The translations under genes were made by a program, and so were the position numbers. A stretch of DNA of 64,000 bases from Podarcis muralis (taxonomy: Eukaryota). The notes beneath the pieces were generated by a model, which searched no databases, was not told the origin of the DNA, and saw only the letters and a program-made list of their open reading frames with translations. This document shows, piece by piece, positions 30,794-61,700 of this stretch (the stretch's first letter is position 1; each line of letters opens with the position of its first letter). The stretch covers positions 101,122,001 to 101,186,000 of the forward strand of contig NC_135659.1 in assembly GCF_964188315.1 (NCBI RefSeq). The letters run 5' to 3'.

Positions 30794-31481
30794 ATCCGTA
30801 TTCCACCTGGATGAGGCGGACGCTCTTGGTGGAAGCAAAGATGTCGACCACGGCGTAAAGGGGCCGGGAGCCTGGGAGACCCCTGGCGCTGGGACCCATG
30901 TCCTCCCCGTTGATGACAATGTGCATGTCGGCTGTCCCGTCCGGCTGCGGGGCGAACAGCACCCCGATCCTGCTCCTCCGGGCCGTGGCAGGGAGCACAT
31001 TGGTCCTGTACAGGTCGTCCAGGAGGTGGCTGTAGCGGCCTGGCCTGCTGCGGCCCACCAGCTTGTCCCGAGGGATCCTGACCTTCTCAATGAGCAAGTA
31101 GGGGTCAGAGAGGAAGCCCCTCACCTGGGCGGAGGCCTCTTCCCCGGCAGCGTCCTGGGCAACCCAGTTGTGGTTGCGGGTGATGGCGAAGACCCAGCTG
31201 TCGCCCAGGTTGACCAGGTCTGGCAGGGAGTACTCGGGCACCGTCTCCAGGCTGCGAGGGTCATGGGCGGTCAGCCCCACCCGCAGGTGGCCGCACCAAC
31301 CCAGCTCCTTCTCCTCGATCTCCACCAGGAAGATCTGCCCAGGAGCCAGGGGCTCCCGGCTGAAGCAGACGCCGTTGGCGAAGCTCTCCACGCGGGTGGC
31401 CTGGGTGCCCGAAGGGTCGATGCAGACATTGGCCCCGTGGATTCGGTGGAAGCGGGTGGGCGGGTGGCCTGCAGCACTCAT
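30794..31481 (-). CDS. NEURL2: NEURL2 coding exon 1 (NHR/neuralized domain); total about 267 aa
   Basis: First ATG at 31481 (the track ORF starts at a TTG at 31571). TRFHRIHGANV, ESFANGVCFSREPL and YAVVDIFASTKSVRL match NEURL2/Ozz. Donor gtaggt, phase 1. Confidence 0.93.
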
Positions 31482-31794: not shown

Positions 31795-32770
31795 ATATTT
31801 TTTTATTTATACCCTGCCCTTCCCAGTTCAAAAACCGGGCTCAGGGCAGCTAACAACAAATTTTAAACACCTAATTGTAAAAGCAGCATAAAATACAGTA
31901 TAAAAACATGAATAACAATAAAATTCAAAGTTCAGAAATCAATTTAGTGGAAATCCATCTAATAAGTGTTAGATAATCCCCAGGGCTAGCTGGCTGAATT
32001 GGTCCTACTTGGGCCAGCGAGGAGACCAGGGGAGAATTAGCTGTGGGGTCTCAAAAAAGGGGAGGGGGAGGGAAGAGAAGGGAAATGAAAGATCAGGCTG
32101 AATTCAAATTAAAGGCCAGGCAGAATAGCTCTGTCTTACAGGCCCGAAGGAAGGTAAATCAAATTAATAAATTAAAGGAGGCAATGGGCACTAGCTTAGA
32201 TGGGGTGGAGGAGGACAGACAAATTAATGATGGTAGAGGAAGATCAACATGGAGCAGATTTTATTTATTTAATGAATTTGTTAGATTTGTATACCGCCCT
32301 TCATCCGAGGATCACAGGGGGGCTGACAGTATAAAAACACAGAAATGTGTAATATAATAACAAACAGAAACAACTGCCTACTCCCTCCTTTAAAAGCCAT
32401 AGGTGGTTTAACCAGCCTAAGGCCTGAGAAAAGAGGAATGTTTCTGCCTGGCACCTAAAGAGATGTAACGAAGGCGCCAGGCGGGACTCCCTGGGGAGAG
32501 CATTGCACAAGCAAGGAGCCACCACAGAAAAGGCCCTTTCTCATGTTTCCACCCCCTGGACCTCTCATGAAGGAGACACACAAAGAAAGGCCTTGGAGAA
32601 TTATCTCAGGGTCCAGGAAGGATCATATCCTGAGTTGTTTAAGGCTTTATAGGTCAAGAGCAGCACTTTGAATTGGGCCCGGAAACTAACTGGTAGCCAG
32701 TGCAGGATTGGTGCTTTATGCTCAGACTGGCTGCCAAATTCTACACCAGCTGAAGTTTCAGGAGCAGCTC
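31795..32770 (-). mobile_element. Two adjacent L2 3' fragments
   Basis: Reverse complements of L2 tail sequences seen at 48.6-49.1 kb and 47 kb. Confidence 0.55.
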
Positions 32771-34290: not shown

Positions 34291-36489
34291 GGGATCCTCC
34301 TCCCTCCTCCCTCGGAGTCCCTCGCCAAAGCCCAGCTTATCGTGCTGCCTGAAGAGCTCAGAGGAGGGAGGGAAGGAAGACGAAAATGAAGAAAGTGAAT
34401 TTCGATAGGGACAATTGAAGCTCAGGTTCTGCACTCAGGAATCCTCTGACGCATAAATACAGGCTGGGGGGGCACCTGTTTCAAGTAGTAGGAAAGAATT
34501 TTTTTTTGGGGGGGCGGTTCTTTGGAGACCACAAGTTTAACAAGAGGTGGGGGTCCCTGATTTTTAAGCAGGGGTTGGGTGGCCATCTGCCAGGGATGCT
34601 TTCCCTGTGGTTCTGGCATTGCAGGGGGTTGGGCTAGATGACCCTTGAGGAAGGGTTGCCCCACGAAAGGACTTCCCCCCACATTTCTGTGATTCAGCCA
34701 TCAGAAACAGCGTCTGGCCAGATTCTGGTGTATTTTCTTAAAAATTGCTGAAAAAACTTCTTTTCCTTTTGCTCTGGTGATCGGATCCTGCTGGCGGGCT
34801 TCCGATAATAGACATCTGGCCGGCCCCTGCGAGAACAGGGTGCTGGAGTGGATGGGCCCCTGGCCTGATCCAGCAGTCTCTTCTGATGCCCTCCAGTTCT
34901 TACGTCAATTCTCTGGTGCATCATGCGCCTGGTGAGCAGTCCATGAGCCACTCTCCCCAGAACCAGCCATGGATGATTCAGAGTTGGGGGGCAAAGAGCT
35001 GTGGAACCCGATAAACTGACAGGCTTTGTCATGATGGGGATGAGCTTCTGCAAGGAGGAGTATCCTTTCAGCAGATGGCCTGAGGCAATGGGCCATTTGC
35101 CCAGCAAGCCTTTGGCCACCACAACTGGCCTGGCCAGTCTCCCCACCACGATCCCGTGTCCCCTCCCTGGGGGACCTCGTGACTTGAGTTCTGTGCCCAG
35201 AGAAGGAAGTGACTCTTCAAAGAGAAAGAACAGCAGGTGCTTCTTGTGTGGGTGGAGAAGGTGCTCTCTGAAATGGCGACATTTGCATCTGGAGAGCGAA
35301 GCTTGCACAACAGGGATCAGCTGCTTGTGACCCAACGGGGAAACTGACGTCACACTTGGGGTTTAAGCCTGCAAACGTCCTTCCCTAAAAACCTACCTTC
35401 CACCTGCTCTCAGACAGCTGAAGTCAATTGAGATGGCTGACCTGCTCCCCAAGGAAGGTCTCCAACTGGCCATTTTCTTGAATCCTCAGCCATTCTGTTC
35501 AGGCATGTCCAACCAGTACATTGCTGAAGAAATGACCGCCGGGTGTGGAGCACACTTCTGAACATCATGGCCTCTATCTAACCTTTGGCTTAGGGGTCTG
35601 CCATCTTAGGGGTCTACCATGCTCTGTCTGTGACCTTTGCCTCCTTCGTTATACATTGTTCAAGGGGAAAATGACGCGGTGGAAACAGGTGCCAAAATAA
35701 CTTGGTACCACCCTCAAAATGTATCTGACTGGTTTTGCATATTGTGCTAATAATAAGAGCCTCTTCTGAGCTAGCTGGCAGCTTGCTTGTGCACAGCTCA
35801 CCTGCATTACCAACTCCTGACTCATGTCCTTCACTTCAGAATGCGATCTACCGGTAGATCCCCGGCTGATCCTGGTAGATCGCAGGACCCTTATCGATCG
35901 TGGGATTAAATCAAGTTTACCAAAAGTTAACCAATAAAAGCTGAAGAACTCTGGGCAATTCTATCCCAAAAAAGCTCAACAACTCTGGGCAATCCACACA
36001 CACTCCTCCTCCCTCCAGTGACAATGGATAGATGACTGCCAGTTTTTTCATACTGGGAGCAGATCGCAGTCTCTTGGGAGTTGGATGTGCCTGGATTAAA
36101 TGACGCTCTCCCCAAGGAAGTTTGCCTGGTGCCTGCATTGTACACCTTTAGGCGCCAGGCAAAAATGTTCCTCTTGAACCAGGCCTTTGATTGATTTGAT
36201 CGACATCCAATGCCTTTTTAAAATGTAGGGTTTTTTTGGGGGGGGGGTTGGGTTGTTTTTATTTTGTTTATATATTTTGATTTCGTTCTCTGAACCACCC
36301 TGAGACCTCAAGGTATGGGGCAGTATATAAATTCAATAAATAATAATAAAAATAAAGTACCCCTAGCATTATTTGGAGGCTTCTGAGAAGAGGACAATCC
36401 CCACTAAACATCAGAATGTGTTGTTTTTTTAAGCAAATCAATTCTTTATTGGAATATTAAAATCTTCTGGCAAAGGAAAAATTGCCTTA

Positions 36490-37340
36490 CATTTCAAAAC
36501 TCATGCTGGTAGCTTCAAGAACACTGTCCAACCATCTTGTCCTCTGTCGTCCCCTTCTCCTTGTGCCCTCCATCTTTCCCAACATCAGGGTCTTTTCCAG
36601 GGAGTCTTCTCTTCTCATGAGGTGGCCAAAGTCTTGGAGCCTCAGCTTCAGGATCTGTCCTTCCAGGGAGCACTCAGGGCTGATTTCCTTAAGAATGGAT
36701 GCGTTTGATCTTCTTGCAGTCCATGGGACTCTCAAGAGTCTCCTCCAGCACCAGAATTCAAAAGCATCAATTCTTTGGCGATCAGCCTTCTTGATGGTCC
36801 AGCTCTCACTTCCATACATCACTACTGGGAAAACCATAGCTTTAACTACACGGACCTTTGTTGGCAAGGTGATGGCTCTGCTTTTTAAGATGCTGTCTAG
36901 GTTTGTCATTGCTTTTCTCCCATGAAGCAGGCGTCTTTTAATTTCGTGACTGCTGTCACCATCTGCAGTGATCATGGAGCCCAAGAAAGTAAAATCTCTC
37001 ACTGCCTCCATTTCTTCCCCTTCTATTTGCCAGGAGGTGATGGGACCAGTGGCCATGATCTTCGTTTTTTTGATGTTGAGCTTCAGACCGTATTTTGCGC
37101 TCTCCTCTTTCACCCTCATTAAAAGGTTCTTTAATTCCTCCTCACTTTCTGCCATCAAGGTTGTGTCATCTGCATATCTGAGGTTGATATTTTTTCCAGC
37201 AATCTTAATTCCGGTTTGGGATTCATCCAGCTCAGCCTTTCGCATGATGAATTCTGCATATAAGTTAAATAAGCAGGGAGACAATATACAGCCTTGCCGT
37301 ACTCCTTTCCCAAGTTTGAACCAACCAGTTGTTCCATATA
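36490..37340 (-). mobile_element. BovB/RTE LINE fragment (RT domain)
   Basis: KGVRQGCILSPCLFNLYAE, LRYADDTTLMA, FTFLGSMI and ITLPTKVRVVKAMVFPVV. Confidence 0.92.
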
Positions 37341-38394
37341 TATTACTAAAAAGGAAACAAGCTACCCATAAGGGCTCTGCTGCATCAGCCAAGTGGCCCT
37401 ATAGCAGGTCCCATAGCCTGCATCTCATAGGAGCCACCCAGATGCCCCCCCCCCAGGAGGAAGGAGGGCAACAGACCCCTGTGTTGCTCACCCTGCCATC
37501 CCAGAATATTAGGAACACGCAGGAAGCTGCCTTCAGCCGAGTCGGACTGCATCGACCATAGGAGCCGACTCTGAGGGGCTGAGGTCCCTTCAGGGCCCCT
37601 AATAAAATATTTGAGCCCCCCCCCCCAGGTGATGGGCATTGCCATTCAGATGATGGGCATGCGCACCCAAGTTTGGCCAACTGATTTCGGTTTGATTTTA
37701 AATGTTGTGATCGCCCTGAGACCTCTGGGTATAGGGTGGTGTATAAATTGAAGAAATAATAATAATAGTGCTTTTTTTCTATTAAAAAAACTGTTTAGAG
37801 ATGCTCTCATTTTGAGTCAAGAAAATCATCATTTTATAGTTCAAATTGGAGGGGGGGGAATACAGGAGACTGCGATTTTTAAAGTCATAATTAGGAAAAA
37901 TTCTAATAATCCCAAATAAAAGGAACAGTATACAAGAAGTAAACAAGGAGGCCATTGACAGGATAAAGGAAGTCTTTTATTTTTAGGTTATGTTTTCTTT
38001 GTGTAAGGGGATAGGAGTTTAATTTTGAGAATGAAATTGTCCGTGGTGGTGGGCTTGTTTGTATGTATGAGTTGTTGTTGTTGTGGACTATGTTGCAAAG
38101 AAAGTAAAAATAAATAAATAAATACAGTAAATGGACAAAAGTACAAAGATTTACAAAATGTCTAGGGGTATGCATCCCCCTGCGTCCCCCCAGAAAAAGG
38201 CACTGATAATAATAATAATAATAATTAATAAGTAATTTAAAAATATAATATAATTATCTGTGGGATTGAGTGTAGGTATGTTTGAACATTTTTAAGGATT
38301 GTATGAAATGTATGTTTGTATGCTTGTATATTCGCAATATGTGTGTATTAATGCTGAATTATTTTAATAATAAATACTTTATTAAAAGAATTAT

Positions 38395-38411
38395 AATAAT
38401 AATAATAATAA

Positions 38412-38466
<55 letters not shown>

Positions 38467-38535
38467 GACCGTGAAGGGCCCTTGCTCTGTCAGGAGGTCG
38501 GCGATGGAGCTAATAATAAAAATAAAAATAATAAT
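38395..38535. repeat. (AAT)n microsatellite interrupted by a 50-bp inverted copy of the CTSA exon/donor junction (38462-38511)
   Basis: 47/50 identity to the reverse complement of 40135-40184. Confidence 0.9.
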
Positions 38536-38569
38536 TTTGGAAATACTAATCCTTCTTCTTCTTCTTCCT

Positions 38570-38896
38570 GTTTCTGGCGCGCGCTGCTCCGCGCAGGAGA
38601 TTACGGTAGCGAGGGCGCGCCGCTTACGGTGAATACGGCCCCGCGACGGTGGGGGGGGGAGAGAGAGGGAGCGCTGCGCGTCTCCGATTGGCCGCCCGTC
38701 CCCGGGGCCCCGCCCCTCTCTTCCGTGTCGTCAGCTGACCCGCCCGGGCCATATGAGCGCGGGTCACGCGCGCGCGGCCCCAGTCGAGCCGCCGGAGCCA
38801 AGGCAAGCGAGGGAGGGCGGGCGGGTCAGGCTGGATGCCCTCGAGGGGTCCCGCTTGCAGGCTCCCGGGCGCGCTCTGATCTCTTTCTCCTTGCAG
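38570..38896 (+). promoter_or_regulatory. CTSA CpG-island promoter / 5' region
   Basis: CpG-rich. ATTGG at 38687-38691, GC box, palindrome GTCAGCTGAC at 38730-38739, and acceptor ctccttgcag immediately before the ATG at 38897. Confidence 0.75.
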
Positions 38897-49836
<10,940 letters not shown>

Positions 49837-58759: not shown

Positions 58760-61700
58760 TTTATGCCAGCCAATCGAGTGTTAAAAACAATACAGCATTA
58801 AATATTAAAAACTTCCCTAAACAGGGCTGCCTTCAGATGTCTTTTAAAGATAAGATAGCTGCTTATTTCCTTGACATCTGGTGGAAGGGTGTTCCACAGG
58901 GCGGGTGCCACTACCGAGAAGGCCCCCTGCCTGGTTCCCTGTAACCTCGCTTCTTGCTGGGAGGGAACCGCCAGAAGGCCCTCAGCACTGGAACAATGGG
59001 GGTGGAGAACAAAGGCTCCTCCTGCCCCCCTCAAGCAGAGGTTGGGCACAACCTGTTCAGCTGCTCCACCCCACGTTTTCAGTCCTCTTCCCTGCCCGGG
59101 ACCCCCACCCAAGTCCCGGTGTTCCCCAGCCCTGGGCTCTGCTGCAGGAGGCACCTCGAAATCCATGTCCATGGTGTCAGACGTGACGACGGGATTCCTC
59201 AGCAGGGAGTAGTCTATCCCAATGTGGTCGTCCACCGGGTTCCGCACTGCAGGGCAGGGGGAGAGAGAGTGAGAGAGCGCAGCTGATGGCCACAGCGTCC
59301 CTTGCCTGCCTGCCTGAGCCACATGGCCATGTTCCACCTCCACGGTCAGAGTGAAGATGCCTCTGAACCCCAGTTGCTGGGAATTGTGTTCGAATCCTGC
59401 TTGCAGGTTTCCCACAGGCCTCTGGTCGGCCCCTGTTAGAACAGGCTGCTGGACTCGAAAATGTTCCAATTAACATTTGTAAAAAAAACCTGAAGCCTTT
59501 CTGTTAGGGATTGTAGGAAAAGACCTGCCAAGGAAACTGAAAAACATTTTCATGTATGCGACAATGGCTTAATAGCACAGGGATGGAAGAATGAAGAAAT
59601 CCCGACTAAAGAACTGTGGCAAGAGAAACTGGTGGACTATGTGGAATTCGCGAAACTGACATATACCGTATTTTTCGCTCTATAGGACGCACTTTTTCCC
59701 CTCCAAAAATGAAGGGGAAATGTGTGTGCGTCCTATGGAGTGAATGCAGGCTTCAGGCAGCTATCCGCAAGCCTTCAGAGCGCTCTGAAGGCTTGCGGAT
59801 AGCAGCCTGCAGCCTGAACCCCACTGCGCTCCCCGGGTTTCAAGCAGCTATCCGCAAGCCTTCTGAGCCCGGCGGGAGTTCCCACCGGGCTCCGAAGGCT
59901 TGCAGATAGCAGCCTGTTCTGGTGGCTGGTGTCGGGGCAAGCTCGGGCTTCCCTTGTCCCAGCCCTGCGGCTGTAAACAAAGGCGCGCGCAGCTTCTCCC
60001 GGCTGGAGAGGTTGCGCGTGGCTAAAGAGGAAGCCAAGCCTGTCTTGGCTTCTTTGCTCTTTGGGACTGGGGGGGGGGGGAATAATTTTTTTTCTTTATT
60101 TCCCCCCCTAAAAACTAGGTGCGCCCTATGGAGCGAAAAATACGGTAAGCTACATGATAAGGACAACTGTGATTTTAAGGAAGAATGGGAACCCTTTACA
60201 AAGTACAGTGGTGCCCTGCAAGACGAATGCCTCGCAAGACGAAAAACCCGCTAGACGAAAGGGTTTTCCGTTTTTGAGTTGCTTCGCAAGACGATTTTCC
60301 CTATGGGCTTGCTTCGCAAGACGGAAACGTCTTGTGAGTCTTGCGATTTTTTTCGCTCCCCCCCCCTTTTTCTAAGCCGCTAATAGCCTTTTAGCCGCTA
60401 AGCCTTTAATAGCCGCTAAGACGCTAAACCGCTAATAGCACTAAGCCGCTAAGCTGCTAATAGGGTTGCTTCGCAAGACGAAAAAACCGCTAGACGAAGA
60501 GACTCGCGGAACGGATTCTTTTCGTCTTGCGAGGCACCACTGTACATAAAGAAACGACAAAATGAACTGGACTCCTTGGCAGGTTTTGAATAAACACAAA
60601 CTTTTCATTGATAATAGCCAATCAAATAAATTAAGGATCTATATAATTTTGTAACATGCAGAGAAGAACATTAAGGGGAATTAAGGGTGATATGTTTTTT
60701 GATAAAATGTTTTGTTGAAATTCCTAATAAAAAATATGATATGGGAAAAAGATGAGGCTGCTGGACTTGATGGGCCATTGGCCTTCTCCTACGCCCCCCC
60801 ACTATTGACCCTCAAGCTCAGGCAGGCAGCAGGGGCAGAGTGTGGGTGGTCTTGCCCTGCCCTTCCTCACCTGGCACCGTGTCCAGCAGAGAGTTGATCA
60901 GCACCAGCCCCGCGTGGTTCAGCACCGGGCAGATCTGAAAGTGAGAAAGGGAATGGGGGAGTCTGCGGGGAGCAGGAAGCAGCAGCCCCCAGTGCAAGGC
61001 AGAGGGAAGGGAGGGTCTCTCCCCCTCTCCTCTTTGGCACCTCTTCCTGCCCCCTGTTGGCAAGGGGGGCTGCCAAAGGTCCCCTGCCCCACCGACCTCT
61101 GGCTTGGTGGTTCTTACCTGCTGGTTGAGAAGGTAGCGCATCCCTGTGGTGAGGAAAGTGCCAAGGAATTCATACACCTTTCTGGAGAGAACGCAAAAGC
61201 GTGAGAGTGGAGCCCAGAAGGGATACAAATCAATGGTTTTCTTAAAAAAAAAAATCTATTTAAATCGGAAATATTTATAATAAAATGCTTTTGGAGGAAA
61301 AATCTTTCTAAAGATAGTTTTCTATTGAAATAACATTATAGTCCAAAGGCTGTTCATCAGGAAATAAGGATTTAAGTTTTTCATGTGTGCTAAAACTCAG
61401 AGTTGTTTGTTTGTTTTTAATTGTTTAACCACATCAGTTAACAAACATGGATATGTACGCTATAATGTTTTTGTGTTAAATAGTTTAAATTGTTATTAAG
61501 GAAATGATTGTTTTTCTCCTTCCGATAAAGTACAGCAGAAAAGTTGTCCAAATATAAACAATAATTTCATAATTACCTGTCTTTGTATTTCTAATAGTAG
61601 AACCAAATAAGTAATTTTTGATATAACTGTAAAAACTACTCTGAAAATGTATTATTCCAAAAATGAAACCTTCATCTGGTTGTAAATATTAAGATTATAC

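What the first reader, a model, noticed from the sequence alone, without database searches (positions are those of the whole stretch)
38462..38511. 50-bp inverted copy of a CTSA exon-intron junction captured in an (AAT)n tract upstream of the CTSA promoter
Seen: 38462-38511 is 47/50 identical to the reverse complement of 40135-40184, which is the last 42 nt of CTSA coding exon 2 plus the first 8 intronic nt, including the donor ACG|GTCAGTAT. It is flanked on both sides by AAT repeats, about 390 bp upstream of the CTSA ATG. Because it includes intron sequence, it was copied from DNA or pre-mRNA, not mature mRNA. The three mismatches suggest it is a real aged insertion rather than an assembly duplicate. 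Inference: a templated insertion at a break in the microsatellite. Its orientation places an intact 5' splice site (exon end 38470) on the minus strand just downstream of the CpG island. A divergent transcript heading to NEURL2 could use it as a first-exon donor, i.e. one gene's splice site recycled for its head-to-head partner. It could also give a short antisense RNA complementary to the CTSA junction.
Basis: partly seen in the sequence, partly recalled or inferred. Interest (0 to 1): 0.7.

Follow-up and report, generated by a model that had tools for sequence, protein, structure and literature searches.

The report
Inverted CTSA exon scrap in microsatellite
A 46-50 base inverted copy of a CTSA exon-intron junction sits in an AAT repeat just upstream of the wall lizard CTSA promoter; it looks like a harmless scar of DNA repair or replication, and no RNA evidence shows that its copied splice site is used.

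Summary
Window 38462-38511 is 47/50 identical to the reverse complement of 40135-40184. That source is the last 42 nt of the second coding exon of a serine carboxypeptidase gene (CTSA by neighbourhood) plus 8 intron nt. It is the only such pair in the window, and none is expected by chance.

The copy lies between a pure (AAT)25 tract and a degenerate TAA tract, about 50 bp outside the CpG island and 386 bp before the ATG. Its edges overlap the repeat by 3 nt (ATA) and 1 nt (T), so 46 nt are unambiguously templated. There is no poly(A) and no second templated piece.

Best reading: a neutral, microhomology-primed templated insertion at a break or stalled fork in the microsatellite. The template was the CTSA sense strand 1.6 kb away, or less likely nascent pre-mRNA.

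The functional idea is unsupported. In two stranded RNA-seq runs, minus-strand depth next to the copy is about 0.3, against 72-106 on the CTSA exon. The NEURL2 coding start lies 7 kb away.

Limits:
- The reads tool masked 38379-38580, so the copy itself was never laid.
- The tissues of the RNA runs are unknown.

The genome is Podarcis muralis.

The parts
38462..38511 (-). Inverted copy of the CTSA exon-intron junction. The CTSA-sense strand is the minus strand. The copied exon end is at 38470 and the copied GT at 38469-38468.
   Evidence: 47/50 to the reverse complement of 40135-40184
38465..38510 (-). Unambiguously templated core (46 nt). ATA at 38462-38464 and T at 38511 fit both the source and the repeat phase, so they count as junction microhomology.
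   Evidence: Reading
38389..38464 (.). (AAT)25 microsatellite, left flank and recipient site
   Evidence: TRF period 3, 25.3 copies, 91% matches
38511..38535 (.). Degenerate TAA/AAT tract, right flank of the recipient site
   Evidence: TRF period 3, 8.3 copies, 81% matches
40135..40184 (+). Source: last 42 nt of the second coding exon of CTSA plus the first 8 intron nt (donor ACG|GTCAGT)
40062..40176 (+). CTSA second coding exon
   Evidence: Peptidase_S10 positions 30-66, E 3e-15. Its acceptor is confirmed by spliced RNA reads from 39087/9. The donor is inferred from GT and the reading frame.
38897..39087 (+). CTSA ATG exon
   Evidence: Stranded RNA depth 72-106. Weak Peptidase_S10 match to positions 1-28.
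38560..39000 (.). CpG island / CTSA promoter. GC is 0.68-0.79 and CpG o/e 0.7-1.35 over 38600-38999. It starts about 50 bp from the copy.
30795..31481 (-). NEURL2 exon 1 coding part, the head-to-head neighbour
   Evidence: Neuralized domain, E 9e-31. 100% identical to Podarcis muralis neuralized-like protein 2.

Best explanation
A neutral scar of templated DNA synthesis. A break or a stalled fork arose in the (AAT)n tract upstream of the CTSA CpG island. A free 3' end paired by 1-3 nt of microhomology with single-stranded DNA 1.6 kb away in the same locus. It copied 46-50 nt across the junction between the second coding exon and its intron, came off, and was rejoined to the other side of the repeat by a second tiny overlap.

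The polarity fits two routes. In one, the left end (+ strand ...AATAATA-3') primes on the CTSA sense strand, either on the sister chromatid or displaced in an R-loop. In the other, the right end snaps back on its own resected strand.

The copy has since gained, or was made with, three substitutions. It has no demonstrated function. Shown: the copy, its flanks, the junction overlaps and the lack of RNA beside it. Inferred: the break, the enzyme and the template strand.
For: - Inverted 47/50 copy, unique in the window, 0 expected by chance.
- The edges share ATA and T with the repeat phase, and similarity stops abruptly on both sides.
- The right flank carries no second templated piece of 12 nt or more.
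- No poly(A) follows the sense 3' end, only the repeat.
- The source lies in cis, 1623 nt away.
- Literature: Pol theta repair gives templated inserts primed by as little as one base pair, and snap-back synthesis gives a reverse-complement configuration (PMC5068794). Replication template switching creates short inverted local copies (PMC5453318 and 10.1101/2021.11.26.470150).
- Independent DNA, by inference only: the 784-nt X4 contig, from a different study than the best holder, lies on 38581-39170. It has 135 more letters beyond 38581, where the tool cut it. That is enough to run through the whole copy to about 38446. Without the copy, 31-mer assembly could add only about 99 letters (69 unique plus up to 30 of pure AAT).
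- No transcription beside the copy on either strand.
Against: - Size and distance are atypical for classic Pol theta inserts, which are mostly under 25 bp with the template within 20 bp of the break; only about 3% come from distant sites (PMC5068794).
- They are also atypical for catalogued short-range template switches, which were filtered to 250 bp or less.
- DNA and nascent pre-mRNA templates cannot be told apart from the sequence.
- The copy itself was never seen in laid reads because that stretch was masked.
- All 3 CpGs of the source survive in the copy while 3 non-CpG sites differ. This fits either an unmethylated island shore or errors made at synthesis, so the 'age' reading is soft.
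Confidence: 0.55

Rival explanations
1. Same kind of repair scar, but templated by RNA. Nascent, unspliced CTSA pre-mRNA tethered at the locus was reverse-transcribed (by Pol theta or a retroelement reverse transcriptase) into a patch, or used directly, at a break in the AAT tract. This would be a local version of a class 2 templated sequence insertion.
For: - The fragment spans an exon-intron junction, so it matches pre-mRNA as well as DNA.
- The left end ...ATA-3' can prime on ...CAGUAU of the sense RNA (reading).
- CTSA is highly transcribed (depth 72-106).
- Class 2 TSIPs show microhomology, lack poly(A) and a target-site duplication, and are proposed to derive from RNA, intronic sequence included (PMC5110952).
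- Reverse-transcriptase-bearing elements are active in this genome: a LINE fragment with huge read depth lies at 36436-37219.
Against: - Reported TSI donors map to distant regions on many chromosomes with no preference, whereas this source is 1.6 kb away in cis. That favours a physically local DNA template, although nascent RNA is also local.
- Nothing in the sequence requires RNA.
Confidence: 0.25
2. The copied 5' splice site has been exapted. Divergent (minus-strand) transcripts from the CTSA CpG island use 38470 as a first-exon donor, towards NEURL2 or a lncRNA. Alternatively, it recruits U1 and protects upstream-antisense RNA from early termination.
For: - The 9-mer ACG|GTCAGT is identical to the CTSA donor.
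- It lies 100-300 nt from the island, with AATAAA 87 nt further on the minus strand.
- 5' splice sites block Restrictor-mediated termination (PMC12211998, abstract).
Against: - Minus-strand RNA depth is 0.28-0.29 in 38592-38787 and 0-0.3 in 38788-38983 in two stranded runs, against 72-106 for CTSA.
- No joint or loose end at 38470 is listed.
- The donor is weak: C at +3, and 6.2 of a possible 12.7 bits.
- The NEURL2 ATG is 7 kb away, behind LINE and SINE debris.
Confidence: 0.05
3. Assembly or polishing artefact: the 50 nt are not in the animal's genome.
For: - The copy lies in a microsatellite, where assemblies are weakest.
Against: - Three mismatches to the source and clean, in-phase junctions are not what a mis-join or chimeric read gives.
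- The length of the X4 contig beyond 38581 (135 letters) fits presence of the copy in an independent sample (inference).
Confidence: 0.05

Closest known systems
Polymerase-theta-type templated insertions at double-strand breaks (TMEJ / SD-MMEJ, including snap-back synthesis)
   Same: - Near-exact copy of nearby sequence inserted at a junction.
- 1-3 nt of microhomology at both edges.
- Reverse-complement orientation, as in snap-back synthesis (PMC5068794).
   Different: - The insert is 46-50 nt, against mostly under 25 bp.
- The template is 1.6 kb away, against mostly within 20 bp of the break.
- The enzyme is unknown.
Replication template-switch mutations (Loytynoja and Goldman four-point model; FoSTeS/MMBIR at larger scale)
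   Same: A local inverted copy made by a transient switch to a nearby template, followed by a return (PMC5453318; 10.1101/2021.11.26.470150).
   Different: - Catalogued short-range events span 250 bp or less and usually replace sequence.
- Here the switch spans 1.6 kb and adds sequence inside a microsatellite. Such tracts were filtered out of those catalogues as low-complexity sequence.
Class 2 templated sequence insertion polymorphisms (TSIPs) in humans
   Same: - A short patch templated from elsewhere, at a presumed break.
- Microhomology at the junctions and no poly(A).
- The donor can include intron sequence (PMC5110952).
   Different: - TSIP donors are distant and thought to be RNA-derived, whereas this donor is the neighbouring gene in cis.
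- Polymorphism was not tested here.

Membership tests
Pol theta-type templated insertion | The insert matches flanking or nearby sequence | tested here: met
   47/50 to 40135-40184, inverted
Pol theta-type templated insertion | At least 1 nt of identity at the priming and resolution junctions | tested here: met
   ATA at 38462-38464 and T at 38511 are shared by the source and the repeat phase
Pol theta-type templated insertion | Small insert (mostly under 25 bp) with the template within about 20 bp of the break | tested here: not met
   46-50 nt, with the template 1623 nt away; typical values are from PMC5068794
Pol theta-type templated insertion | Dependence on POLQ | not testable with these tools
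   Needs genetics
Short-range template-switch mutation | Reverse-complement copy of nearby sequence with a return to the original template | tested here: met
Short-range template-switch mutation | Switch points within a few hundred bp (250 bp or less in the catalogue filter) | tested here: not met
   1.6 kb; the filter is quoted
Class 2 TSIP | No poly(A) and no LINE-type target-site duplication | tested here: inconclusive
   There is no poly(A). A target-site duplication cannot be judged, because both flanks are the same microsatellite.
Class 2 TSIP | Presence/absence polymorphism or lineage-specific presence | not tested
Functional 5' splice site | GT with a consensus-like context | tested here: met
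   The 9-mer is identical to the CTSA donor; 6.2 of 12.7 bits by a rough matrix
Functional 5' splice site | Transcribed on its strand and seen in junction reads | tested here: inconclusive
   Minus-strand depth is about 0.3 or less beside it, and no junction is listed. However, the site itself was masked, the tissues are unknown, and only about 12% of the reads were sampled.
CTSA (cathepsin A / protective protein) | Serine carboxypeptidase S10 domain | tested here: met
   exon by exon. The joined coding model was not built or searched.
CTSA (cathepsin A / protective protein) | Head-to-head with NEURL2, as in human 20q13 (my knowledge) | tested here: met
   The Neuralized-domain gene on the minus strand at 30795-31481 is 100% identical to P. 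muralis NEURL2

The most novel reading that the evidence does not exclude
By accident, the templated insertion delivered a working U1-binding 5' splice site into the upstream-antisense direction of a strong housekeeping CpG-island promoter, 87 nt ahead of an AATAAA. In some tissue (muscle or germline) it would shield divergent transcripts from early termination, or serve as the first-exon donor of a NEURL2 isoform or a new lncRNA. That would be a natural example of a new spliced transcript born from a repair scar.
Probability: 0.04. Interest if true: 0.6.

Novelty: new member of a known kind. Interest (0 to 1): 0.2.

Why it matters
As it stands, this is a clean, datable example of a longer-range (1.6 kb) inverted templated insertion into a microsatellite in a reptile germline. 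It is useful as a specimen for catalogues of template-switch and TMEJ scars, which usually filter out low-complexity sites. It may also serve as a presence/absence marker among Podarcis lineages. It would matter more only if the copied splice site were shown to be used, because that would show a repair scar seeding a new exon boundary at a bidirectional promoter.

Tried and rejected
- **Chance match:** rejected.
- **Larger duplication or second templated piece:** there is no similarity beyond the 50 nt, and no other match of 12 nt or more for 38500-38600 anywhere in the window.
- **Retroposon tail as the origin of the AAT tract:** SINE-like tails ending in AAT/TAA occur nearby (36298-36349, 37714-37765). 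No such element abuts 38389, judging by my own reading; no repeat-family search was run.
- **Direct read confirmation:** Read laying (one call allowed) skipped 38095-38237 and 38379-38580 as repeats. Only the flanks and one contig length are informative.
- **Reaching independent contigs through a spurious ORF that starts inside the copy (38482-39249):** no relatives in the protein collection.
- **X15 leader:** a 29-nt leader is joined to the acceptor at 38896/7, and 34 letters sit at a 38671-to-36230 joint. Neither string is in the window. The second is probably a low-complexity or repeat match. This is left unexplained.
- **Rfam:** no family in the window.
- **Earlier findings:** no other templated insertion of this kind is noted in this genome, and no notes mention CTSA or NEURL2.
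- **Other:** The joined CTSA coding model was not built.

Full report
**What is there**

Window 38462-38511 (+) reads as the reverse complement of 40135-40184 at 47 of 50 positions. The mismatches are at 38476, 38482 and 38498. Similarity ends abruptly on both sides. A 46-nt core pattern with up to 3 mismatches finds only these two places, with none in 100 dinucleotide shuffles. A self-BLAST of the window finds no further copy.

**What the source is**

- 40063-40176 translates to positions 30-66 of the serine carboxypeptidase S10 profile (E 3e-15), and 38897-39085 to positions 1-28 (weakly).
- RNA reads join the ATG exon (end 39087) to 40062 onward. The loose end at 39089 is seen in 140 and 193 reads.
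- The exon ends ACG, followed by GTCAGT at 40177. The source is therefore 42 exon nt plus 8 intron nt, and the copied exon end is 38470 on the minus strand.
- The neighbour on the minus strand (30795-31481) carries a Neuralized domain. It is 100% identical to Podarcis muralis neuralized-like protein 2.
The S10 gene is CTSA by its head-to-head position; the human arrangement is from my own knowledge.
- I searched the exons one by one. The joined coding model was not built.

**Anatomy of the site**

- The copy lies between (AAT)25 at 38389-38464 and a degenerate TAA tract at 38511-38535.
- It is about 50 bp outside the CpG island (GC 0.68-0.79 and CpG o/e 0.7-1.35 over 38600-38999) and 386 bp before the ATG.
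- ATA at 38462-38464 continues the AAT phase and also matches the source. T at 38511 fits the TAA phase and the source. So 46 nt (38465-38510) are unambiguously templated, with 3-nt and 1-nt junction overlaps.
- No poly(A) follows the sense 3' end.
- A target-site duplication cannot be judged inside a repeat.
- The right flank holds no other templated piece.

**Mechanism**

These are the marks of microhomology-primed templated synthesis at a break or stalled fork. Two routes give the observed polarity:
- The left end (+ strand ...AATAATA-3') pairs with TAT at 40182-40184 of the CTSA sense strand and copies it. That strand could be on the sister chromatid, displaced in an R-loop, or the nascent pre-mRNA.
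- The right end snaps back on its own resected minus strand.

Pol theta inserts are primed by as little as one base pair, and snap-back synthesis gives reverse-complement inserts. But they are mostly under 25 bp with templates within 20 bp of the break; about 3% come from distant sites (PMC5068794). Replication template switches make inverted local copies but are catalogued at 250 bp or less (PMC5453318; 10.1101/2021.11.26.470150). Class 2 TSIPs are patches with microhomology, thought to be RNA-derived, from distant donors (PMC5110952).

This case works like all three and fits none exactly. It is a longer-range (1.6 kb), 46-50-nt inverted patch. I favour a DNA template in cis (0.55) over nascent pre-mRNA (0.25). 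The sequence cannot separate them.

**Age**

Two of the three differences change residues (Gly to Asp, His to Gln in the sense frame). I recall both as conserved in CTSA, which was not checked with a tool. If so, they arose on the copy. All three CpGs of the source are retained while three non-CpG sites differ. That suits an unmethylated island shore or errors at synthesis. Three events in 50 nt give only a very wide age range.

**Is it real DNA?**

There is one indirect pointer. A 784-nt contig of DNA run X4, from a different study than the best holder, lies on 38581-39170. It has 135 further letters where the tool cut it. In the window that reaches about 38446, through the whole copy. Without the copy, 31-mer assembly could add only about 99 letters. 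This is inference, not proof. The mismatches and the clean junctions also argue against an assembly duplicate.

**Function**

The two raw RNA runs are stranded: the CTSA exon gives first_mate_on- depth of 72 and 106, and 0 on the other direction.

| Bin | first_mate_on+ (minus-strand RNA) | first_mate_on- (plus-strand RNA) |
|---|---|---|
| 38984-39170 (CTSA exon) | 0 | 72; 106 |
| 38788-38983 | 0-0.3 | 8.3; 14.7 |
| 38592-38787 (island, next to the copy) | 0.28; 0.29 | 0.17-0.43 |

- Reads further upstream fall in bins whose DNA depth marks them as repeats.
- No joint or loose end at 38470 is among those listed.
- A first exon running from the island to 38470 would lie mostly in unmasked sequence, so it would have been seen if expressed at more than about 0.4% of CTSA.
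AATAAA follows 87 nt later on the minus strand.
- The NEURL2 ATG is 7 kb away, behind LINE and SINE debris.

The functional proposal is therefore unsupported but not excluded.

**What could not be done**

A search with an ORF that starts inside the copy found nothing.

**Verdict**

This is a real, tidy and probably neutral templated insertion: a new member of a known kind. Interest is low to modest.

Noticed in passing
window 39176-39704: A 23-bp minisatellite, 23 copies at 89% matches, fills much of the CTSA intron between the ATG exon and the source exon. It lies between the two arms of the inverted pair.
   Followed up: no
window 38896-38897: An RNA contig of run X15 joins the strong acceptor just before the ATG to a 29-nt leader that is absent from the 64-kb window. 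It is either a distant 5' non-coding exon or a chimeric contig. The raw-read runs list no matching loose end among those shown.
   Followed up: partly
window 38671 and 36230: Run X15 shows a back-joint from 38671 to 36230 with 34 foreign letters between, at depth 55. Those letters are not in the window. It is probably a match to the G/A-rich run at 38650-38672 plus a repeat edge, but this is unexplained.
   Followed up: partly
window 36436-37415: A LINE reverse-transcriptase fragment (RVT_1, minus strand) has summed DNA word depth of about 0.16-1.9 million across these bins. RNA depth runs from about 6-24 in the last bin to about 370, on both strands. This points to a very abundant, transcribed family in this genome.
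   Followed up: no
window 36298-36349, 37714-37765; minus strand about 31800-31860: Retroposon-like 3' ends (CCCTGAG...TATAAAT...) run into AAT/TAA repeats. Many AAT-type microsatellites at this locus may be seeded by such tails.
   Followed up: no
window 38685-38771: The CTSA promoter holds an inverted CCAAT box (ATTGG at about 38687-38691), a palindrome GTCAGCTGAC (38730-38739) and GTCACGCG (about 38763-38770). The last two resemble the CLEAR/E-box motif of lysosomal genes (my knowledge; read).
   Followed up: no
window 59747-59816: A 70-nt near-perfect palindrome (94%), with a related direct copy at 59836-59868, probably part of a repeat element. There is no Rfam match.
   Followed up: partly
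window 38940, 38984, 39028: Both RNA runs differ from the window at these CTSA exon positions in essentially all reads: 11/12 and 15/15, 51/51 and 102/102, 125/125 and 173/173. The DNA contig of X4 differs by about 1% (5 other letters plus 4 gaps in 590 nt). The sampled animals belong to a lineage distinct from the reference.
   Followed up: no
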